A stretch of DNA of 64,000 bases from assembly GCA_002189035.1 (NCBI GenBank), contig NEEC01000010.1:2852001-2916000 (forward strand), given 5' to 3'. Both the position numbers and the translations under genes were made by a program. Below the pieces are notes generated by a model. That model was not told where the DNA came from, ran no database searches, and worked only from the letters and a program-made list of their open reading frames with translations. Every line of letters begins with the position of its first letter. Position 1 is the stretch's first letter. Source of the stretch: Utricularia gibba (Eukaryota > Plantae > Magnoliophyta). This document shows positions 1 through 31,608 of this stretch, piece after piece.

Positions 1-3000
1 TCTTTGATGTATTCCCTAAGAACATGGTATTTGATTTTGATATGCTTCGTCTTCCCAAACATGACCGGATTTTGAGCTATACTTATGGCTGATTTGCTGT
101 CAATTTTCAGAATGAGTGGCTTGTTAATCTTGATCTGTAAATCTTCACATAATTTCAGGAGCCATTGAGCGTGATTTGCAGCACAAGCTCCAGCCATGTA
201 TTCTGCTTCGGCTGAGGATTGAGCTACTAAGGTCTGTTTTCTGCTGTTCCAAGCAAATGCAGCAGAGCCCAGAGTAAACAAATAACCAGTGGTGGATTTA
301 AGATCAGATTCGTCACCTGCGAAATCAGAGTCTACGAACCCTTGAAGAGATAGGTCAGTATGCCTTTTGAAGTATAAACCCATAGTTTTTGTAGCATTCA
401 GATATTTGAATATTTGTTTAGCTATTCTAAGGTGTAAAGCAAGAGGGTGATGCATAAACCTGGATAGAAACGTTACAGCGAATGTAATGTCCGGTCGAGT
501 TGAGGTGAGGTATAGTAGGGCACCAACAGTCTTCTGATATTCTCGTATGTTCACTGAATTTTCTTGAGGATCTTGTGGCCCTGAATCGGCAGAATTTAAT
601 TCTTTCAGATAGTTGTTTGCCTTGTTCTTCAGGTATGGAGTGAAAGGCGTAGTTGCTTCTTTTGCATTGTCCATCCCAAATTTTTTTAGTAAGTCTTCAG
701 TGTATTTTTGCTGGCTGAGAAATATAAAATTGGGATCTTGTATTATCTCTAGTCCAAGAATATATCTTGCTGGCCCTAGATCAGTCAATTCGAACCGTTG
801 TTTGAGCCTTGATTTTTGATCTGCTATCAATGTCTCGTTATTTCCTGTTAGTAAGATGTCATCAACGTATAAAGATATGATGACCTTTCCAGTTTGATTG
901 TTGAGGGTGTATAGAGTAGGGTCGTTCTTGCTTCTGATATAACCCATTTGACCAAAGTATGAATCTATGGTTGAATACCATTCCTTGGGCGCTTGTTTAA
1001 GCCCGTAGAGAGCCTTTTGGAGTTTTAACACCTTATTTGAGCCATCCTTTAGTGTAAAACCGGGAGGATTTTCAACATATATGTCTTCTTTCAAGTCTCC
1101 ATTCAGAAACGCATTCTTTATGTCTAAATGGTGCAGGATCCAACCTTGACTGGCGGCTAATGCGATAATCAATTTTATTGTATCCAGACGAGCTACCGGT
1201 GCGAAAGTCTCCCAGTAGTCTATACCTTCCTTTTGAAGATATCCTTTTGCAACCAGCCTAGACTTTAACTTATTTACTGAGCCGTCTGGATTTAGCTTTG
1301 TGCGATAAATCCATTTTAATCCCAACGGTTTAATATTGAGAGGTTTATCCACCGCTGTCCACACTTGATGCTCTGCTATGGCCTGTAACTCATTATCCAT
1401 TGAGGTTTTCCATGCAGGATCATTGAGAGCTTCGAAGGGAGAGGTAGGTTCACAAATCATAAGCGATCTGTCATAGACTTCAGTAAGAGGACAGTAACCT
1501 CTAGCAGGCTCTTCATCTATGAGATGATCGGCTGACTGCAGCATAAAGTGATGTGTATAGGAATTGTAGTTGTTTGCTGAATCTTCTGAGATATTTTCTG
1601 TGTTATCATGTCTTTCAGATATAATTTGCTCAGAGTTTTGGAAGTGAGATGTATTTTCCTCCTGTTCTTGTAATGAAGAGAATTGATATTCTGATTCTCT
1701 GCTTTCTCCATGTTGAGGCTGTTGCGACGAAGTAGGATATGGCATATGATCATTACTTTGCATGTCTTGATTCCTTTCTGAGTGATGTCTGAAATAATTG
1801 TTGTCCTCTGTTTCTGCACCAACAAGATTGGAATTATTCGTAATAGTGGTATTAGTTTCAGGAAGTTCATTGACAAGATTCTCTTCGTGCATTTCAGTAA
1901 GATTTTCAGATGCATTGATAGGAAATAGGAGTTGCATGTCTCTGGAATATTCAGCTTCGTTTTCAGGAGTAGAAGAGATATTATGCCAGTCATAGGTCAG
2001 ACTTTCTTCAACCACAACATCAGCACATCTTTGAACTTCTATACATTGTTTGGATGGAATAAATATTCTGTAAATTTGAGAGGAGTCCGAATATCCCATA
2101 AAGACCCCATTTGAGCATGATTCTCTAACTTTCTGCGTTTTTCTTTAGATATATGGACATAGCAGAGGGATCCGAAGATTTTCAGATTCTGTAGATCTGG
2201 GACTTTTCCATACCACAGTTCATGTGGAGTTTTTCCTTCAGGTATTCCTTTGGTGGGAAGTCGATTTAATAGGAATACCGCTGTGTTAACAGCTTCTCCC
2301 AAAAGCGCAATGGTAAGTTGTGTTCCAATAACAAGCAACGAGCCATATTCATAATCGTTTGATTTTTCCTTTCACAAACACCATTTTGTTGAGGGGTATA
2401 TGGAACGGTAAACCGATGAACTATACCACTTGCATTGCAGATGTCTCGGAGTTCGGATGATTTGTATTCCCGCCATTGTCTGAATGCAAAGTAAGTATTC
2501 TACAATTGCTTTGTAATTCTGCCATCATCTTGAACTGCTTGAAGTATTTAGTCACTTCAGACTTTTGCTTAAGAAAATATACCCACATATGCTTGGTGTA
2601 GTCATCAATAAATAGGACATAGAATTTCTTTCCACCAGGTGTCTCAACATGCATAGGTCCGCATACGTCAGAGACTACTAGCTGTAGTTTAGAGTCGGAT
2701 ACTTCAGTACGATTCTTGAATGGCTTCTTGTGCATTTTCCCAAATAGACAGGTGCTGCACGGGAAATTCCAGTCCTTTAATTGAGGTACGCCATGTATAA
2801 CTCCTTGGGTTTGCGCTGTTCTGAGTTGGCTTGCATGATAGTGACCTAATCTTTTGTGCCATAGGAAAGAGGTATTTACAGCTGCAAGACAGAAATTACT
2901 ATTAGTTGTCATGCAGTTAACTGGAAAGAGGCGATTTACCATGGGCACTTTTAGTACAATATTGTGAGCATAATCCTTCAACAAGCACATATTGTTCTCT

Positions 3001-4268
3001 ATATTCAACTCATATCCACATTCTGCTAGTTGTCCTGCACTCAGTAAGTTGTGAGAAGCCTTTGGTACATAGAATACATTAGTAATCTTGATGAGTTTTT
3101 GTTCAGTTTCCAGACAGATTGATCCAACACCTTCAACTGCAATGAGCGTTCCATCAGCAATGGTGAGAGTTTTTCCTGATATTGGGGTATATGTTGTGAA
3201 TATAGACTTGTTGTTGGTCAAGTGATTACTGCAGGCGCAATCAATGAACCAGATTGTGTTGTGTCGTAGATCAGTGAAATCAGAGAGAGTAGTCTTGCTG
3301 CACAAGATATAAACTGAAGACTTCACTTTCATATTTGAATCATCAGGAGATACATGAATTGATTTGTTTTTTGAATGTTCAGAAGATGCAGCAACAACAT
3401 AAGTAGAGGCATATGATTTCTTGGTGGGACACACACGCTCCACATGGCCTTTGGTTGAACAGATTGCGCAATGAGCCTCAGGATGCCAAAAACAGTTCGT
3501 TGGAATGTGGTTTTTCTGTGCGCAATATGGGCAAGGAGGATGTGGCCCCTTTTTCTCTTTCTTGACAGGTAGGAAACTTGGTGCAGAATATTGTTGTGTC
3601 CCATTTTCTCCTTTAGGACCTGCTATAGTAAGTGATGCTTTGAAGGCAGCTTCTAATAGATTTTCTTCATTGCGAGATTTACGTCTGCTGTCCACATTTT
3701 TGAAGTGTTGGAGCAGTTGCTGCAGACTCAGAGTTTCTAGAAATCCGGTTGCTTCCAAGGATTCAACGACAGCATCATAATCTGCCGGAGCACTATGAAT
3801 GATCCTGGCCTTAAGCTTGCGCTCTTCACGGGAGTCAACTTCTTCTCCAAGGCGCTTTAGTTTTTCCAGGTTTTTGAGAAGTTGTTCTGCATTGGTGGCT
3901 ACCTCGCCATCTCTAATTTTGAAGTTGTAAACTTCATTCCATAGTTTCTGTATCTCCCTGTGCTTGTCTTCCTTTGTTTCTTCAAAGGTTTTCTCGAGCA
4001 TAAGCCACGCCTCTCTTGGAGACCTTCGAGTTATACACCTGTAAGCATCTCCAACCACTGCTGTGGCTAGCACAGCTGCAGCCTGAATTTCTTTGTCTCT
4101 ATAAGCTTTTTCAGCTGCAGTTTTTTCTTCAGGTGTTCCTTCAAAAACTGGATCAGTGGCTATTATTTTCCAGAGCCCATGAAGTTGGAGATATATCTCC
4201 ATTTTTGGCGCCCAAATATCGTATTCCTTTCCGTCAAAAATGGGAGGTAATATGTTTGTTACAGACAT
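1..4268 (-). CDS. Copia gag-pol polyprotein (3'-partial; three apparent -1 frameshifts at ~2470, ~2299, ~2106)
   Basis: ATG at 4268 (MSVTNILPPIFDGKEY). Integrase motifs SDVCGP / SDNGG(E)Y / QNGVCERKN. RT motifs KSRLVAKGY, LYGLKQAP, YVDD. RNase H motifs DSDFAG, SSAEAEY, IDSKSAI. Hand translation from ~2105 to base 1 gave no stop codon. Confidence 0.93.
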
Positions 4269-24552: not shown

Positions 24553-25217
24553 CCCGGTTTGGATATTCTAGTCACAGTTCAGGAGTGAAAATCTTAGTCT
24601 TTCCATTCAAATTCGAGAGCTCTTGTTGAAGTTTCTGAAATACTTAGTTTTCACAGATTAGAGCCATACCAAGATCAACATAAAGCTCAGAGTAACATGT
24701 ATCAGCAAGGGAATTGGCATATCCAGCACACTGAAGTGCAGCAGAAGCCATGCAGGATCATCCCAATATTCTCTATTTACAAGAATCTCAATGACTATAA
24801 AAGCAATTCGTTCATTTCATATTGAGTTACCGACAGATTATACGGTCTCCTTGTTGGTAAACCTCATCATGGTGTTTGAGATTGCTTGACAACAGAAGAA
24901 AAAATCTTGGGTTTGGCAATATAATATGACGGTAGACAATGAGAACATGTCACATAATTAGCCTATAATCAAGTGGAAACAGTGAACAAGCCTGTACATG
25001 AATCAAGTTGAGCGAATGAAGGGCACCAATACTTCCTCATTGTTTAGGCATAGAAGCTGCCACGAAAAGAAAACATGTGATGGGATGATGTAGTGAGTTC
25101 CACGCATTATGCTGGGTCCTCGAGGAAACCTGACAATGAAAACGGAGTAGGTATTCAGCAGGTAACTAAAACAACAAGATATTTTGAAACTTCAAGTCTA
25201 AGGTAATGCAACCTCTT

Positions 25218-28200
25218 TCAGTCTCCTCGCCAGTCAGTCAGTTCACTACGGGGTACACGTAGTTTTGCTGCAAGCTCTTCAGATTCCGTGTCATTCACAA
25301 CACCTCGGCATCTTGAAGAACCGCAACGGCAAACTAGTTTTTCGTCACTAGAAATGAACCTGCAAGACACATGGCCACAAAGCAAAGCGAAGAATTATGG
25401 ATGAAATGCTTGAAACAATGCCCACAGTTGATGAAGCTGTAGGTGGAAAGATTAAAAACCTGTAATCATATGTCAATTCTTCCCACTGCCTAAGATCTCG
25501 TTTGGCAAAAATGATGATATGATCATCACCATTGACGCTGATTACTCTTGAATAACAATTTGGCTACAACAAAAAAGAATAGAGATAAAAACCTAAAACG
25601 AGAAGCTGAGACAAAAAACTCATCTTGAGAAAACTCTAGCGAGACTGCAGTAAAATAGACAATCACCATTTTCAAGAGGCTGTTAGCAAACATGCATACT
25701 TTTCCATAAATTGAAATCTATGATCTACATGCATAGAAACTTAGCACCCAAGCATGAGATTTGATGGCACAAATGGATTCAAGAAACAAGACCACATGAT
25801 ACATACTTCACATGAGTGGTTTATTAGTTGAGCTATGCTTCCCGCTCTAGTGGCATCTACGACACTCTTATCATCAATGCGAAACATATATGTTCCAGCA
25901 CCCTGCATGAGGATTTAAAGCAGCAATATCAATAATTTTTTCAAGAGATTTCACAATAGCCAAGCTAAAACAGCCACATTAATAGTCTGGTGGAGCCCGA
26001 AATCGGCAAATCGGCAAGTGGCACGTGGAGGCAGGCAGAGGAGACACTAATTACTTCGCACCAATAAAAGTCTCCAATTCTAAGAAAGGCAGGCTTACCA
26101 CTAATGAATTGTAGATCATATGTTCTCTTCTGTCAGCAATAACGGGGCGGATAAGTTCACCAGTATATTCAATTACCTACAACCCAGAAAATTTAGCACT
26201 ATCACAGAATCAAATTGCTAAGGAAAAAAAAGTGAAAAATCACCATGTCTCCAGCCCTGATATGAAACTTAGTAAAGACACCAAAACCATGTATCCGAGA
26301 TTTCCCTGAAATAGGGTCCAGGAAACCCAATGATCAACATCTCATTTGATTGAACAGAATTTACACTTGAGAATTCCATACAACATAAAAATAAGCTGGC
26401 AAGAAACACAGGTGGCAAGATCAACTTATTGTCTACCAACATAGTCTATGGTGGTCGAACAGAATTTAGACTTAGTACTTCTATAGTAGAAAAATAACCA
26501 CTCGACATTTGGCAAGATCGACCACAAATAGTCAGCTTCAAACAACTAGTGCCAAACACAACACTTCTCGGTAAAGGGACATCATGGACTATGTGGGTAG
26601 ACAATCAAGGATTATGCAAAAAGCTGATTAATACAACACAAAAATTTAAGAGAGCAGAATGGATTAAGATAAGGGAAAGCATGAAATCCGAGTGCAGATA
26701 ACATATCACACTTGTTCTTTCCCATAAAAATGCTAAATTTATGAAATGCGAAATTTACCGAATGCCAGCCTTTTTCTAAATGTTTTGCGCATGAAATTAT
26801 ATTTATCAGCCACTGAAAGAATCTCATAAGATGGCTCAAGTCGAGAGTTTTGCAGCTTCTGAAGAGAAGGTCCATCGGAAGATTTGTCCCATAATGGCAT
26901 ATGGGGACTGCATCCACCAAGCAAGAAAGGCGCATTCTCCACATATAAGCGTTTTAATGAAGCAGCAGGCACATCTGATTTGTTTGTTTGGAGCTTTCCA
27001 AGAAAATCACGAGGCTCTGATTGCAATCACAATAAAAGGACTTAGTATAGGAATCAACCGAGAACCAAATACAGAGGAACCCCAACTAGTGTTTTCCATC
27101 TAAAAGAAAAATATGGACTAAAAGAGATAATTAACACCTGTACGAGCACAGCCAGAAGGATTTTCGGGTGGGATATAATTTGAATGATCATAGATCATTT
27201 TTTCATCATGCTCATTGTCTGGTAAACGTTCAGCTGACAATGGCCCATGCTTTTTACAGAAAGAAAGTAGTTGAATGCATTGACTCTCTTCATCGTCACC
27301 AACAGGGATCAAATGCACATCCTCATTCTCTGTCTAAAATAAGAAACACACATGGCTTGAAAATAGGCGGGGAGTGAAATTTGAACGATGATGAGTCCAT
27401 TTATCAATCAAGCGTCTTACCTCAAGGCAAAACCCAGCAGCACGTGCACATAGAGGATGATATGACACACGACAATTGTTATTTGAGCACTGTACAGAGA
27501 ACATAAGATGATGTATAGTTTTAAAAAGGAGTTTAGGGCACGGTTGTTCGTAAAGAGAAAAAAAGGAAAGCAAAAGCATTGTCATTTGAATCTAAATTCC
27601 CACATGCACTACGGCTCCATAGTCCATTGCTTCATCATGTGATAAACGCACTAGTCCTGTTGGGGGGGATTACCTGGATGCATGCCCCATAAGAAACGTT
27701 ACAGATGCTACAAACTAGTTTCCAGCGATCCTTCAAAATGAAACAACAATGGCATCAAGATGGAAACCAACTCTCCAAAACTAATGTAGCTGTGAGCAAT
27801 ACATCACAAATATCTCATCCTTCTTCTCGAGCATACACATTGTAAATAATCACAAGAACATATACCCCATGTTTCTCCTTCAAAGGGGTTATTAAACAGA
27901 ATAACTGCCATCAATCCTGTAGTCGATATCATAAGAAGCAGTACCTTGTTGATTCTAGATAGCCCATCAATTGGTTCCATTTTCTTTATATCAGACAAGC
28001 AGGTTTCTGTGTAAAAAAATAGCAATTTAATTATACACCATATTTGACACAATAACGAAGATAAAACCAAGAATATACTAGTCATGATCACAGCACCAAC
28101 CAGGTATCCATATGGCACAAGCAAGATGAGCCCAGCGCCCATCTGTTGTAGGCTTCATAGCACCGCCTGCAATAAATTCATACATCACATTGGAAAATCC

Positions 28201-31200
28201 AGATAGACACTCTTGAAGACAAAATGCCGAAGCAACCTTAAAACATGGATGGAAATAACTAATTACCTACAACAGGGCACAGACAGCAAGGTGGAGGTGT
28301 CTCTGGAGCCCCTGGACGACATAACTTGCACAACCACAGCACATCATCTGTAGTCTCAGGTTCTCCATAGCACCTAGCGTGCACCTGCAAAAATATCATG
28401 GAATATGAATAAACATACACATTCAACTCTAGTTTGATGAGCAGTCCAAAGAGGGTTGTTAACCAAAGCGCCTCCACAAAAGTCAAAACAAGGAAATGAA
28501 AAAAAGGATTCTCAAGAGACATGCATGTGCTTAGAAATATGAAGCATTGAAACTTGGAGGAAGTTACTTGACCCAATGAAGCTAAAAAGCTCAAGATTAA
28601 GAAGAGACACAAATTTGAAAGCAGGGGAGAATCAATTGCAAGGAAACAGAAGCGAAGCTTCACATAGGAACGGATCCTTGAAATAAAGTCTAACAAATTA
28701 CAAGGGAAAAAAATATATAGGTCCATGCAATTGTGAATCATCACATCAAAAAGGCAAGTTACCATCATTCGGCATTTGTCGCACTGAAGAAATAAATTGC
28801 TCTCGTACTCCTGAAATTAACATAAGGTCTACTAAGCAGATCCATCAGTAGGATAACTTTCACAAAACTCATCCAAGTAAACATTTTGAACCCTCTTGAA
28901 ATAAAAATAATTACCTCATCCATATGGCAAACATTGCATTTGTCAAGGTCTCTCCATTCAACATGCACACGCCTATAACCATAAGGAATACACTTGGATT
29001 TTCTATTAGCTAAATCATTTTTTTTGCTCATTTCATCATGGCTCACACAATCCCTGCTACTTGAATCGGAACCATCTTGATGCTCTCCACTGCCGCATTT
29101 ATTCACATCAGTATCACAATCTCGCAGTTTCAGCATCCTTTCAGGAAGTTTTTGCTCATTAAGATACCTGAGAAAATCAAATATATAGCTCAAGTGAAAC
29201 GAGAGTGAGAGATTATAACATCTTCTGATATGAATACACATCCATACAGACTCAGCTGAATAACACTCTATGGTACCAAAAATTGAAGATAACTGGATGT
29301 TCAAAACTCAATGACCAGAATCTTGGTATGAAAGAGGAGTGCAAAAGATGCTAAGAAACATTTTTTCCCCTTTACTTCAGTGGTTTCTTTTCACATGTGC
29401 AGAAGATGAAAACAGCCTGTAGATATGGACAATCTTCCATGGAGGCAGTGCAGCAAGGAATAAAAATGTATATGGAGTTAAACGCAAAATAACAAAATTT
29501 TTCCATCCAATAAAGAGGTATCAAGCACGTATCTAGCAAACAATATAGATGCCTTAATAACCCAATCATATAACAACATCATGCCATTTCAAGCCTGAAA
29601 AGTATCAGAAACTAACTAAAGCTTAATGGACACCATAATTGTATAGCAAACTCACATTCTTACTTCCTCCATTCCACGGATAAAAGTAGGTTTGCTGCAC
29701 TTAGCATGATAAAGAGAGACGAGGCCTGTGCAGAAAGAATATGCGTTCTTATGTTTTATCCTGTATGTCGAAAGAATAAAACAACATTGAAGTTTTCCTC
29801 AACCAAGAGCCTGAAAATATTCAAGAAACACTTCCACGAAATCCCAAGGCAAGTAGGTACTGACCTGGCAAAATCATGCGAACCAAAGAACTGTACTAGA
29901 ACTGTTTTTTCTCCAGACATTTTATTTAGACCCTTGTGTTTAGACACTTGAGATTCATCCATAACAATGGCTGGCCAGACAGCATGGCCTACGTCAAAAA
30001 TTTGAAAAATATAATGACCAGCATTTTGAGTAGTTCAGATGTGAAATGGTCATAGAAAATAACCATCACTGGAATCTGAGGGACAACAATATGCATCATC
30101 ACATGGTAACCAAACAAACCATCACAAGCAACAATGATCAAACCACGCACCGAAGCACAAGTAAAGATTTTTTTCTTTTTACTTCAGAAATATGCCAATC
30201 CATCCACATGATCCTTTTAAGTAGCATGTGATGAAAAAAATAGATCTATCTTAATCAAGATTTGATCATCCATGAAAATCTTAGACACACCAGCAAGTTT
30301 GGCCCAGATTACATCCCCCGTATCCATCTCCTGGCTGTCATCCAAACTGGCTGCCAAAATCTTCAGCTCATCTATATCAAGTCCATCTGATTCTGAACAT
30401 CTAGTACGTACTTTCAACTTCAAACTTCGCATCAGCTCTAGAGACACGTTAAACATTATTCTTTCATTGGAAAAACAGAGGTTTTCTTCGTCTCCGTCCT
30501 CATACCTTACCTGGATTCATAGCAAAGGCGCTATCGTAAGTATACTACTATCTAGAATAAGAAGAATCATATTGTACCACAAAAAAAAAGTTACCAGATG
30601 CCGGCCGGTGTCCGAATTATAACTGATCACGTTACCACAATACCAAACACCATCCAATGGCCACAAGACCTATGCATGTTGAATCCAAATTTACATTCAG
30701 ATTTTATTCAAGCCAAAGTGAATAATAGATGCTTTATTATGGCACAATAGCTGATCAAAGTGGCACACATAAAAGCAGTCTACCAGTAAATACAATCTCG
30801 ACTTATATGATTGCACATCAGGCAGATGTTAATTAATTTCATACCTTGCAATCTAACCCTACAAATTTCGTGGGGTCCTCATCTTCAAAACTCAACCTAC
30901 AAGAATTTTCATGCCAAATTAACTCCTATAACTTGCACAAGATATTAGATTTATCCAATTAAATCCAGGTGAAAGCAGAACACACCACTTCCAGGTTTTT
31001 CTCCGACCATCTCCTGCACTCTTCGGATCGTTTTCAGCTCTAAAAATGCGCTTCTTGGGCTTCCAAGTCTCAGCGCTAAGAAATTTTTTCGAGCATATCT
31101 TTTTCCTAAGTTCCCGAATAGTAATCTCACCACTGCTCAACTGCATTTCACCATCCAATTTTCCGGATGGCTTATCACAGACCGCCGGTTTCACCAACTC

Positions 31201-31608
31201 ATCCCTGTTCTCTATTCTAGCCCGTTTAACTCCGCGTTTATCATCACATAATCCTTCCAAATCGGAGGAATTTAACATTCCATGAAAAGAAGGGTTCTTC
31301 CGGTTCTTAAATCGTCTTGAATAAACCAGAGTTTCACGGGAATTCAACGCGATCGGCTTATCTCCAAACTGATCATCCGCATTAATTTTGGGCGTCGCCT
31401 CCTTGAACTTATTCGATCCCGTAGCGGTGACGGAAGGAGACGCAACCGAGTAAACTTCGCAAAGTGGTATACGCTCGTGCGAACAACTCAGCCCATCGCG
31501 TTTCCCCTCCTCTTCCCGTGACCCATTCTGCTTCCTTCCCTCATCCTCTTCATCCTGCGAATGCGACGCACCAGCAGCAGGCGGCGCAGACGCCAGAGCA
31601 AGCATCAT
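25218..31608 (-). CDS. ATX2: Trithorax-class histone H3K4 methyltransferase (ATX1/ATX2-like)
   Basis: Multi-exon gene. Tudor-like region ([10 protein letters not shown]), PWWP ([10 protein letters not shown]|HAVWPA), PHD ([12 protein letters not shown]...), ePHD, SET ([19 protein letters not shown]) and post-SET (CRCGSSRC). TGA at 25218. ATX1 versus ATX2 cannot be resolved here. Confidence 0.9.

What the first reader, a model, noticed from the sequence alone, without database searches (positions are those of the whole stretch)
28915..29167. Trithorax ATX1/2 homologue apparently lacking the entire FYRN/FYRC (DAST) domain
One 253-nt exon runs in frame from the post-PWWP segment ([11 protein letters not shown]...[10 protein letters not shown]) straight into the pre-PHD segment ([38 protein letters not shown]). 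In ATX1/ATX2 as I recall them, well over 100 residues of FYRN+FYRC, encoded by several exons, lie between these segments; this domain is the signature of the trithorax subfamily. The flanking splice sites are canonical, and PWWP, PHD, ePHD, SET and post-SET look intact, so this reads as a clean in-frame domain deletion (junction ~29020-29045). It would be a natural test of what FYR does in H3K4 methylation.
Basis: partly seen in the sequence, partly recalled or inferred. Interest (0 to 1): 0.75.

Follow-up and report, generated by a model that had tools for sequence, protein, structure and literature searches.

The report
Trithorax gene that lost FYR domain
A plant gene for an ATX1/2-type (trithorax) histone H3K4 methyltransferase has cleanly lost, through a roughly 1-kb genomic deletion, the FYR module that marks this family since green algae, yet it is still expressed and conserved, so it offers a natural test of what that module is for.

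Summary
On the minus strand, a 20-exon gene (ATG 31608, stop 25220-25218, 935 codons, all introns GT..AG) encodes an ATX1/2-clade methyltransferase. Exon 7 (28915-29167, 253 nt) runs in frame from the post-PWWP linker into the pre-PHD segment.

The nearest relative is Genlisea aurea M569_00564 (76% identity, sister at 100/100 support). It encodes the same stretch in five exons that include FYRN and FYRC. About 144 residues, the whole folded FYR module, are missing here. Both breakpoints lie in predicted disordered linkers.

No FYR remnant exists anywhere in the 64 kb (tblastn and a profile HMM). An independent DNA contig is collinear with the window. Spliced transcript contigs from three studies carry the fused exon.

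The rest of the gene is constrained: 199 of 202 family-invariant residues are kept, dN/dS is 0.125, and all 12 listed exonic variants among deletion-bearing haplotypes are synonymous.

The loss is not unique. Rhododendron ATX1/2 genes lost FYR independently, with different breakpoints. I found no paper describing either case. Whether this genome also holds a FYR-bearing copy could not be tested.

The parts
25218..31608 (-). Coding region of the FYR-less ATX1/2-type gene. It has 20 exons and 935 codons, with ATG at 31608 and the stop codon at 25220-25218. Exons (high to low): 31608-30986, 30896-30845, 30669-30595, 30510-30291, 29988-29865, 29760-29656, 29167-28915, 28810-28763, 28384-28267, 28166-28101, 28006-27945, 27730-27674, 27489-27421, 27333-27138, 27016-26759, 26305-26244, 26176-26099, 25902-25807, 25563-25460, 25359-25218.
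   Evidence: Splice joints in RNA contigs of three studies; GT..AG refinement and an open frame over the whole model.
28915..29167 (-). Exon 7, the fused exon of the finding (253 nt, window protein residues 401-484). Its 5' boundary equals that of Genlisea exon a, and its 3' boundary equals that of Genlisea exon e.
29023..29167 (-). Left half of exon 7: the post-PWWP, pre-FYRN linker ([11 protein letters not shown]...SHDEMSKK). It is homologous to the first 150 nt of Genlisea exon a.
29005..29022 (-). Deletion junction (MSKK|NDLAN). The breakpoint cannot be fixed to the base because the linker sequence has diverged.
28915..29004 (-). Right half of exon 7: the post-FYRC linker and the start of the PHD finger ([30 protein letters not shown]). 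It is homologous to the 3' part of Genlisea exon e.
29168..29655 (-). Intron upstream of exon 7 (488 nt, GT..AG). It holds no FYR-coding remnant and has zero RNA depth.
28811..28914 (-). Intron downstream of exon 7 (104 nt, GT..AG).
29656..30669 (-). Exons 3-6, encoding the Tudor-like and PWWP reader modules.
   Evidence: Pfam PWWP and PTM_DIR17_Tudor on the pieces; alignment to homologues.
27421..28810 (-). Exons 8-13, encoding the PHD finger and the extended PHD (zf-HC5HC2H).
   Evidence: Pfam on the pieces; invariant residues kept.
25218..26305 (-). Exons 16-20, encoding SET and post-SET. The motifs LINHSC, EELTYDY and [10 protein letters not shown] are present.
   Evidence: Pfam SET on the pieces; translations; invariant residues kept.
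25130..25212 (-). 3'-UTR intron (83 nt), with its donor 5 nt after the stop codon.
   Evidence: Loose ends of the RNA contigs, located in the window.

Best explanation
This is a real, transcribed orthologue of the plant trithorax genes ATX1/ATX2. A single genomic deletion of about 1 kb removed the 3' end of one exon, four introns, three whole exons and the 5' end of a fifth exon. The two exon stumps were fused in frame into one 253-nt exon. The deleted coding part (about 144 residues) is the complete FYRN+FYRC (FYR/DAST) fold, and both breakpoints fall in flexible linkers, so the neighbouring PWWP and PHD modules are untouched. The deletion happened after this lineage split from Genlisea and before the common ancestor of the sampled accessions. 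Those steps are shown. The following steps are inferred. The 935-residue protein still works as an H3K4 methyltransferase: Tudor/PWWP and PHD/ePHD read chromatin, and SET/post-SET catalyses. It lacks the FYR surface, which in other proteins serves as a docking or clamping module. FYR would therefore be dispensable for the function that keeps this gene under selection, most likely because in plant ATX1/2 it mediates accessory partner or transcription-factor recruitment and is not needed for catalysis.
For: Gap defined: pea P0007 residues 451-600 (FYRN 463-521, FYRC 528-601) match nothing in the 64 kb at E<=10. Relative to Sesamum P0063 the gap is 462-608, covering FYRN 468-525 and FYRC 532-601.
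Ancestral structure: Genlisea locus L001 encodes residues 193-421 in five exons, and the window exon shares the outer boundaries of the first and fifth.
No remnant: the FYR HMM hits the Genlisea exons at E 1e-15 to 1e-20, while the best hit in the window is E 4.6 and lies outside the gene.
Not an artefact: the independent DNA contig X3 is collinear. RNA contigs X7, X11 and X12 (three studies) show joints 28809->28914 and 29165->29654, with no depth in the intron.
Intact gene: 935-codon frame and 19 GT..AG introns in the coding region.
Constraint: 199 of 226 invariant columns are kept, 24 are gapped (all in FYR) and 3 are substituted, the same number as in Genlisea. Lineage-specific changes are 61 versus 50 (not significant), and dN/dS is 0.125. 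All 12 listed exonic variants among deletion-bearing haplotypes are synonymous, with P about 1e-8 to 2e-7 under neutrality.
Module boundaries: the AlphaFold2 model of Genlisea 185-470 has pLDDT 85-95 for the FYR module and below 50 for both linkers where the breakpoints lie. The segment matches the TBRG1 FYR fold 2WZO.
Placement: sister to Genlisea at 100/100 support.
Parallel case: the Rhododendron FYR-less ATX1/2 keeps 201 of 203 non-FYR invariant residues.
Against: No enzymatic or genetic test exists, so activity is inferred from conservation. dN/dS against Genlisea averages over time before and after the deletion, and dS (about 1.08) is close to saturation. The polymorphism test rests on 12 sites, and the reads tool did not show 13 further differences. 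In animal MLL proteins the FYR domain is reported to be essential for methyltransferase activity (PMC8401916), which argues that its loss could impair function. A FYR-bearing paralogue elsewhere in this genome, which would make this copy accessory, cannot be excluded. The RNA runs are labelled RNA only as a guess, although the precise intron-less contigs show that they are cDNA.
Confidence: 0.85

Rival explanations
1. This is a sub- or neo-functionalised paralogue. An intact FYR-bearing ATX1/2 elsewhere in the genome performs the canonical role, and this copy is kept for a narrower or altered role. This reading accepts the anatomy but changes its meaning.
For: Plant genomes hold lineage-specific numbers of ATX1/2 copies (PMC3457860).
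Against: No FYR-bearing protein closer than Genlisea appeared in three large protein searches. The window's own product is not in that collection either, so this is weak evidence. The only other ATX-type locus noted in this genome is described as a three-exon relic.
Confidence: 0.4
2. This is a pseudogene in early decay. The deletion inactivated the gene and it is merely still transcribed.
For: A signature domain is gone. In MLL the FYR domain is reported to be essential for activity (PMC8401916).
Against: The gene has an open 935-codon frame and all splice sites are canonical. 199 of 202 non-FYR invariant residues are kept. There is no rate acceleration relative to Genlisea, and dN/dS is 0.125. 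There are 12 synonymous and 0 nonsynonymous variants among deletion-bearing haplotypes. Correctly spliced transcripts occur in three studies.
Confidence: 0.05
3. This is an assembly collapse, or the FYR exons are hidden or alternatively spliced in the flanking introns.
For: None was found.
Against: The independent DNA contig (X3, from a different study) matches 27668-30207, differing only by single-base changes and one 1-nt intronic indel. RNA depth is 0 over 29200-29599 in all three RNA runs. tblastn and the profile HMM find no FYR-coding DNA in any frame of the 64 kb.
Confidence: 0.01
4. This is an ATX3/4/5-type gene, a subfamily that never had FYR, misread as ATX1/2.
For: The resulting architecture (PWWP-PHD-ePHD-SET) resembles that of ATX3/4/5 (PMC3457860).
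Against: The nearest relatives are all ATX1/2-type. The gene is sister to the FYR-bearing Genlisea gene. The linker sequences on both sides of FYR and the exon boundaries are homologous to ATX1/2 genes.
Confidence: 0.01

Closest known systems
Genlisea aurea M569_00564 (partial, 831 aa; P0138), the nearest relative found
   Same: It is 76% identical over 676 aligned residues and sister at 100/100 support. It has the same exon boundaries around the region and the same Tudor, PWWP, PHD, ePHD and SET modules.
   Different: It keeps FYRN (249-306) and FYRC (313-380), encoded by three whole exons and parts of two more that the window gene lacks.
Arabidopsis ATX1/ATX2 and their angiosperm orthologues (SDG class III-1)
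   Same: The window gene belongs to the same clade by descent. It shares the PWWP, PHD, ePHD, SET and post-SET modules and nearly all family-invariant residues.
   Different: The literature treats PWWP-DAST(FYRN/FYRC)-ePHD-SET as the signature cassette, stable since Chlamydomonas (PMC3457860, PMC6986063). Here the DAST/FYR part is absent.
Rhododendron vialii 'ATX1 isoform X1' (P0193, 960 aa), R. vialii P0192 and R. molle RHMOL_Rhmol09G0045700 (P0194)
   Same: They are ATX1/2-clade proteins with Tudor, PWWP, PHD, ePHD and SET but no FYR. The loss is genomic, and 201 of 203 non-FYR invariant residues are kept.
   Different: This is an independent event in Ericales with other breakpoints (ADSGEEC|KMELSNSK; Sesamum coordinates 453-596 versus 462-608). 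Two exons remain separated by an intron instead of being fused. A family-invariant His in CNVCHMDE is replaced by Asp.
Arabidopsis ATX3/ATX4/ATX5
   Same: The domain order is PWWP-PHD-ePHD-SET without FYR.
   Different: They have a different phylogenetic origin (PMC3457860). The window gene is not related to them by descent, and it reached a similar architecture by loss.
Animal MLL1/MLL2 (KMT2A/B)
   Same: They are Trx-type SET enzymes that carry FYRN and FYRC.
   Different: In MLL the two halves lie far apart, hold the Taspase1 cleavage fragments together and are reported to be essential for activity (PMC8401916). In plant ATX1/2 they are adjacent. Here they are dispensable for whatever keeps the gene under selection.
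Volvox ATX1/2-type protein lacking PWWP
   Same: It is a precedent for the loss of one module from the otherwise stable ATX1/2 cassette (PMC3457860).
   Different: It lost a different module (PWWP, not FYR), in an alga.

Membership tests
Plant ATX1/2 (trithorax, SDG class III-1) | Descent: groups with ATX1/2 proteins in a phylogeny | tested here: met
   Sister to Genlisea ATX2-like at 100/100 support inside Lamiales ATX1/2. The best hits are all ATX1/2-type. No ATX3/4/5 sequence was included in the tree.
Plant ATX1/2 (trithorax, SDG class III-1) | FYRN+FYRC (DAST) between PWWP and PHD | tested here: not met
   No Pfam FYRN or FYRC on any exon piece. tblastn and the FYR HMM find nothing in the 64 kb. 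The alignment gap covers the whole module. By architecture the gene is therefore not a canonical member; by descent it is a derivative of the clade.
Plant ATX1/2 (trithorax, SDG class III-1) | PWWP domain, with the Tudor-like module upstream | tested here: met
   Pfam PWWP at E 3e-8 on the exon-5 piece, plus a weak Tudor hit. Invariant residues in this region are kept.
Plant ATX1/2 (trithorax, SDG class III-1) | PHD finger plus extended PHD | tested here: met
   PHD_2, zf-HC5HC2H_2 and zf-HC5HC2H on the pieces. 89 of 90 invariant columns in Sesamum blocks 600-799 are kept.
Plant ATX1/2 (trithorax, SDG class III-1) | SET and post-SET with catalytic motifs | tested here: met
   Pfam SET on two pieces. 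69 of 70 invariant columns in Sesamum blocks 900-1099 are kept. The motifs NHSC, ELTYDY and CxCx4C are seen in the translations.
Plant ATX1/2 (trithorax, SDG class III-1) | H3K4 methyltransferase activity | not testable with these tools
   This needs an enzyme assay or a genetic test.
Plant ATX3/4/5 (SDG class III-2) | Descent from the ATX3-type lineage | tested here: not met
   All the nearest relatives are FYR-bearing ATX1/2 proteins, and the exon structure and linkers are homologous to ATX1/2. The test is indirect, because no ATX3/4/5 sequence was fetched.
Plant ATX3/4/5 (SDG class III-2) | PWWP-PHD-ePHD-SET without FYR | tested here: met
   The architecture is the same, but it arose by secondary loss.

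The most novel reading that the evidence does not exclude
This FYR-less gene is the only functional ATX1/2-type gene of the species, the other copy having decayed to a relic. If so, a flowering plant runs its trithorax pathway without the FYR/DAST module conserved since green algae. The independent, equally clean loss in Rhododendron would then mean that FYR is a repeatedly expendable accessory of plant ATX1/2 and not part of its core mechanism.
Probability: 0.35. Interest if true: 0.75.

Novelty: new variant of a known kind. Interest (0 to 1): 0.6.

Why it matters
FYRN-FYRC (DAST) is the feature by which the ATX1/2 subfamily is defined, and it is described as part of a cassette transmitted unchanged from Chlamydomonas to angiosperms (PMC3457860). 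I found no experimental statement of its role in plant ATX1/2. What is known comes from MLL, where FYR clamps the cleavage fragments and is reported to be essential for activity (PMC8401916), and from JMJ14, where it docks NAC transcription factors (PMC4659397).

This finding is a natural, precise excision of the folded module. The gene around it stays expressed and under purifying selection, and a second independent excision exists in Rhododendron. Together these show that the module can be removed without making the gene useless. They also supply ready-made constructs for testing FYR function: cross-species complementation of atx1 atx2, comparison of interaction partners, and comparison of chromatin targeting. 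If this is the species' only ATX1/2, the result is stronger: the module is dispensable for the pathway itself.

Tried and rejected
1. My first expectation, an ATX3/4/5-type gene that naturally lacks FYR, was rejected by the homologue lists, the linker and exon-boundary homology, and the tree.
2. Hidden FYR exons: tblastn with four FYR-bearing proteins at E<=10 and a 164-position FYR HMM over all six frames found nothing.
3. Microhomology-mediated deletion: an AAAATC motif occurs near both Genlisea breakpoints, but joining through it would shift the frame. No mechanism beyond a simple deletion is claimed.
4. P0002 from Rhododendron simsii looked like a second fused junction. It is a two-exon model that runs into a retrotransposon integrase, and only fragments of an ATX gene lie in the 24-kb locus.
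5. The other short hits are only the exon-e equivalent.
6. Finding the window's own product or close relatives in the protein collections failed: it was absent from the region-limited search in which it should rank second.
7. An exact look-up of a window ORF to name the organism found nothing on record.
8. Look-ups of the scan's notes by sequence for a second copy were blank, which is uninformative.
9. Papers: nothing on FYR-less ATX1/2, on Utricularia or Rhododendron trithorax genes, or on engineered FYR deletions of ATX1.
Full report
OBSERVATION. The plus-strand frames are closed. Transcript contigs laid on window 25200-31199 show splice joints on both sides of this stretch. After GT..AG refinement the exon is 28915-29167 (253 nt), with introns 29168-29655 and 28811-28914.

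GENE. The remaining joints plus three introns solved by frame and GT..AG give a 20-exon model. The ATG is at 31608, the stop codon is at 25220-25218, and the reading frame is an uninterrupted 935 codons. Pfam run on the separate stop-free pieces finds PWWP, PHD_2, zf-HC5HC2H_2/zf-HC5HC2H and SET, with a weak Tudor-like hit, and no FYRN or FYRC. It was joined only inside local scripts, from window coordinates, for the frame check, alignments, the tree and substitution counts.

WHICH SUBFAMILY. I first expected an ATX3/4/5-type gene, a group that normally lacks FYR. That expectation was wrong.
- The exon alone, searched against 1.84 billion representative proteins, hits ATX1/2-type proteins. The long ones all carry FYRN+FYRC between PWWP and PHD.
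- Two further searches, with Salvia and Genlisea proteins as queries, list 120 proteins each. All are ATX1/2-named or unnamed, and all carry both FYR halves.
- The nearest relative is Genlisea aurea M569_00564 (P0138), 76% identical over 676 sites.
- In a maximum-likelihood tree the window gene and P0138 are sisters at 100/100 support, on a long common stem inside core Lamiales.
This agrees with an earlier agent's guess that the genome belongs to the bladderwort family. I did not establish the species itself.

WHAT IS MISSING.
- Pea ATX2 (P0007) aligns with residues 408-450 to 29169-29041 and with residues 601-641 to 29022-28915. Its residues 451-600 (FYRN 463-521, FYRC 528-601) match nothing in the 64 kb at E<=10.
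- Against Sesamum P0063 the gap is 462-608, covering FYRN 468-525 and FYRC 532-601.
- Against Genlisea the window exon follows the protein up to DKMSKK (residue 242) and resumes near residue 387.
- The junction in the window is MSKK|NDLANRKSK, at about 29022-29005. The linker has diverged too far to fix the base.
- A 164-position profile HMM of the FYR segment, built from 50 homologues, hits the three internal Genlisea FYR exons at E 1e-15 to 1e-20. In all six frames of the window its best hit is E 4.6, outside the gene.

HOW IT AROSE. The Genlisea locus (L001) encodes residues 193-421 in five exons: about 2669-2879, 3147-3240, 3337-3435, 3532-3688 and 3804-3936. The window exon begins at the 5' boundary of the first and ends at the 3' boundary of the fifth. 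In Genlisea coordinates, one deletion of about 1.0 kb (roughly 2822 to 3830) accounts for this. It would remove the end of exon a, four introns, three exons and the start of exon e. Both breakpoints lie inside exons, so exon skipping or cDNA-mediated exon loss is less likely than a plain genomic deletion. An AlphaFold2 model of Genlisea 185-470 shows a confidently folded FYR module (pLDDT 85-95) flanked by low-confidence linkers (below 50), and the deletion's ends coincide with those two linkers. The removed segment matches the single-domain FYR fold of TBRG1, PDB 2WZO.

NOT AN ARTEFACT.
- A DNA contig from another study and sample (X3) covers 27668-30207 collinearly, with 13 single-base differences and one 1-nt intronic indel.
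- Contigs of three further studies (X7 3084 nt, X11 2412 nt, X12 999 nt) lack every intron at GT..AG borders, so they are cDNA. They carry exon 7 uninterrupted.
- RNA depth over 29200-29599 is zero in all three runs.
- Runs X1 and X2 may be the source of the assembly and were not counted.

IS IT STILL A WORKING GENE.
- Of 226 columns invariant in 49 FYR-bearing homologues, the window protein keeps 199 and lacks 24, all inside the FYR gap. It changes 3, the same number as Genlisea, and two of those positions are shared with Genlisea.
- With Sesamum, Erythranthe or Olea as outgroup, lineage-specific changes are 61/50, 61/44 and 52/47 for the window gene versus Genlisea. None of these differences is significant.
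- Nei-Gojobori dN/dS against Genlisea is 0.125 overall and 0.17 for the flanks inside exon 7, with dS about 1.08, near saturation.
- Every sampled haplotype carries the deletion, so the differences among them most likely arose after it. The 12 listed exonic differences are all synonymous, against 28 non-coding ones. Under neutrality 12 of 12 has P about 1e-8 to 2e-7. The tool withheld 13 less well supported differences.
Together these results exclude a decaying pseudogene for practical purposes.

A PARALLEL CASE. A search restricted to the post-FYR part of Genlisea, in which the window protein would rank second, returned no window-like protein. It did return three Rhododendron entries without FYR in their Pfam lists. 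Pfam confirms Tudor, PWWP, PHD, ePHD and SET and no FYR in R. vialii 'ATX1 isoform X1' (960 aa) and R. molle (996 aa). Their junction (ADSGEEC|KMELSNSK; Sesamum coordinates 453-596) differs from the window's. In the R. vialii locus the two exons remain separate, a stump of exon a survives as intron sequence, and the three internal FYR exons are absent. These proteins keep 201 of 203 non-FYR invariant residues. The R. simsii model P0002 is a related, retrotransposon-interrupted annotation. FYR has therefore been excised at least twice, independently, from asterid ATX1/2 genes.

WHAT IS KNOWN. The literature treats PWWP-DAST-ePHD-SET as the signature of ATX1/2, stable since Chlamydomonas, with only a PWWP loss noted in Volvox (PMC3457860). 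It treats FYRN-FYRC as specific to this clade within class III (PMC6986063; PMC3567966). In MLL1/2, FYRN and FYRC hold the Taspase1 fragments together and are called essential for activity (PMC8401916). In JMJ14, FYR docks NAC050/052 (PMC4659397). ATX1-5 differ in chromatin and DNA-motif targeting (PMC13084085). That paper does not mention FYR. I found no paper on a FYR-less ATX1/2, natural or engineered.

MECHANISM. Shown: the anatomy of the deletion, transcription and splicing, and purifying selection on the remaining domains. Inferred: the protein is still an H3K4 methyltransferase that reads chromatin through Tudor/PWWP and PHD/ePHD, and it has lost a partner-docking surface. Because FYRN and FYRC are adjacent in plant ATX1/2 and flanked by linkers, removing them need not disturb the other modules.

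OPEN. These tools cannot tell whether a FYR-bearing ATX1/2 exists elsewhere in this genome. The scan's notes mention only an ATX-type relic of three exons on another piece (s1-184189; unchecked). Look-ups by sequence were blank.

VERDICT. This is a new variant of a known kind. It is of moderate to high interest as a natural domain-deletion experiment, made stronger by the independent Rhododendron case and limited by the unknown copy number and the lack of functional data.

Noticed in passing
window 25130-25212 (-): The ATX gene has an 83-nt 3'-UTR intron whose donor lies 5 nt after the stop codon. All three RNA contigs jump from about 25210 to 25097-25126.
   Followed up: partly
L003 9647-10797 (Rhododendron vialii CP127073.1); P0193, P0192, P0194: There is an independent genomic loss of the FYR exons in Rhododendron ATX1/2 genes. 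These are annotated in public records as ATX1/ATX2 isoforms, and I found no paper on them. They also replace the family-invariant His of CNVCHMDE with Asp.
   Followed up: partly
L002 10001-13867 (Rhododendron simsii CM024962.1); P0002: A gene model runs from the FYR-less ATX exons straight into a retrotransposon integrase. I did not resolve whether the rest of the ATX gene lies beyond the insertion.
   Followed up: partly
P0005 (189 aa): This protein fragment has FYRN but apparently no FYRC before the DLDKCNVC motif. It may be another partial FYR loss or a gene-model artefact.
   Followed up: no
window 26408-26787 and 28398-28657: Low-depth unspliced contigs in RNA run X11 cover parts of two introns, which suggests pre-mRNA or intron retention.
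   Followed up: no
another piece of the same genome (note s1-184189): An earlier first-stage note describes an ATX-type gene reduced to its last three exons. It could be the decayed duplicate of this gene.
   Followed up: no
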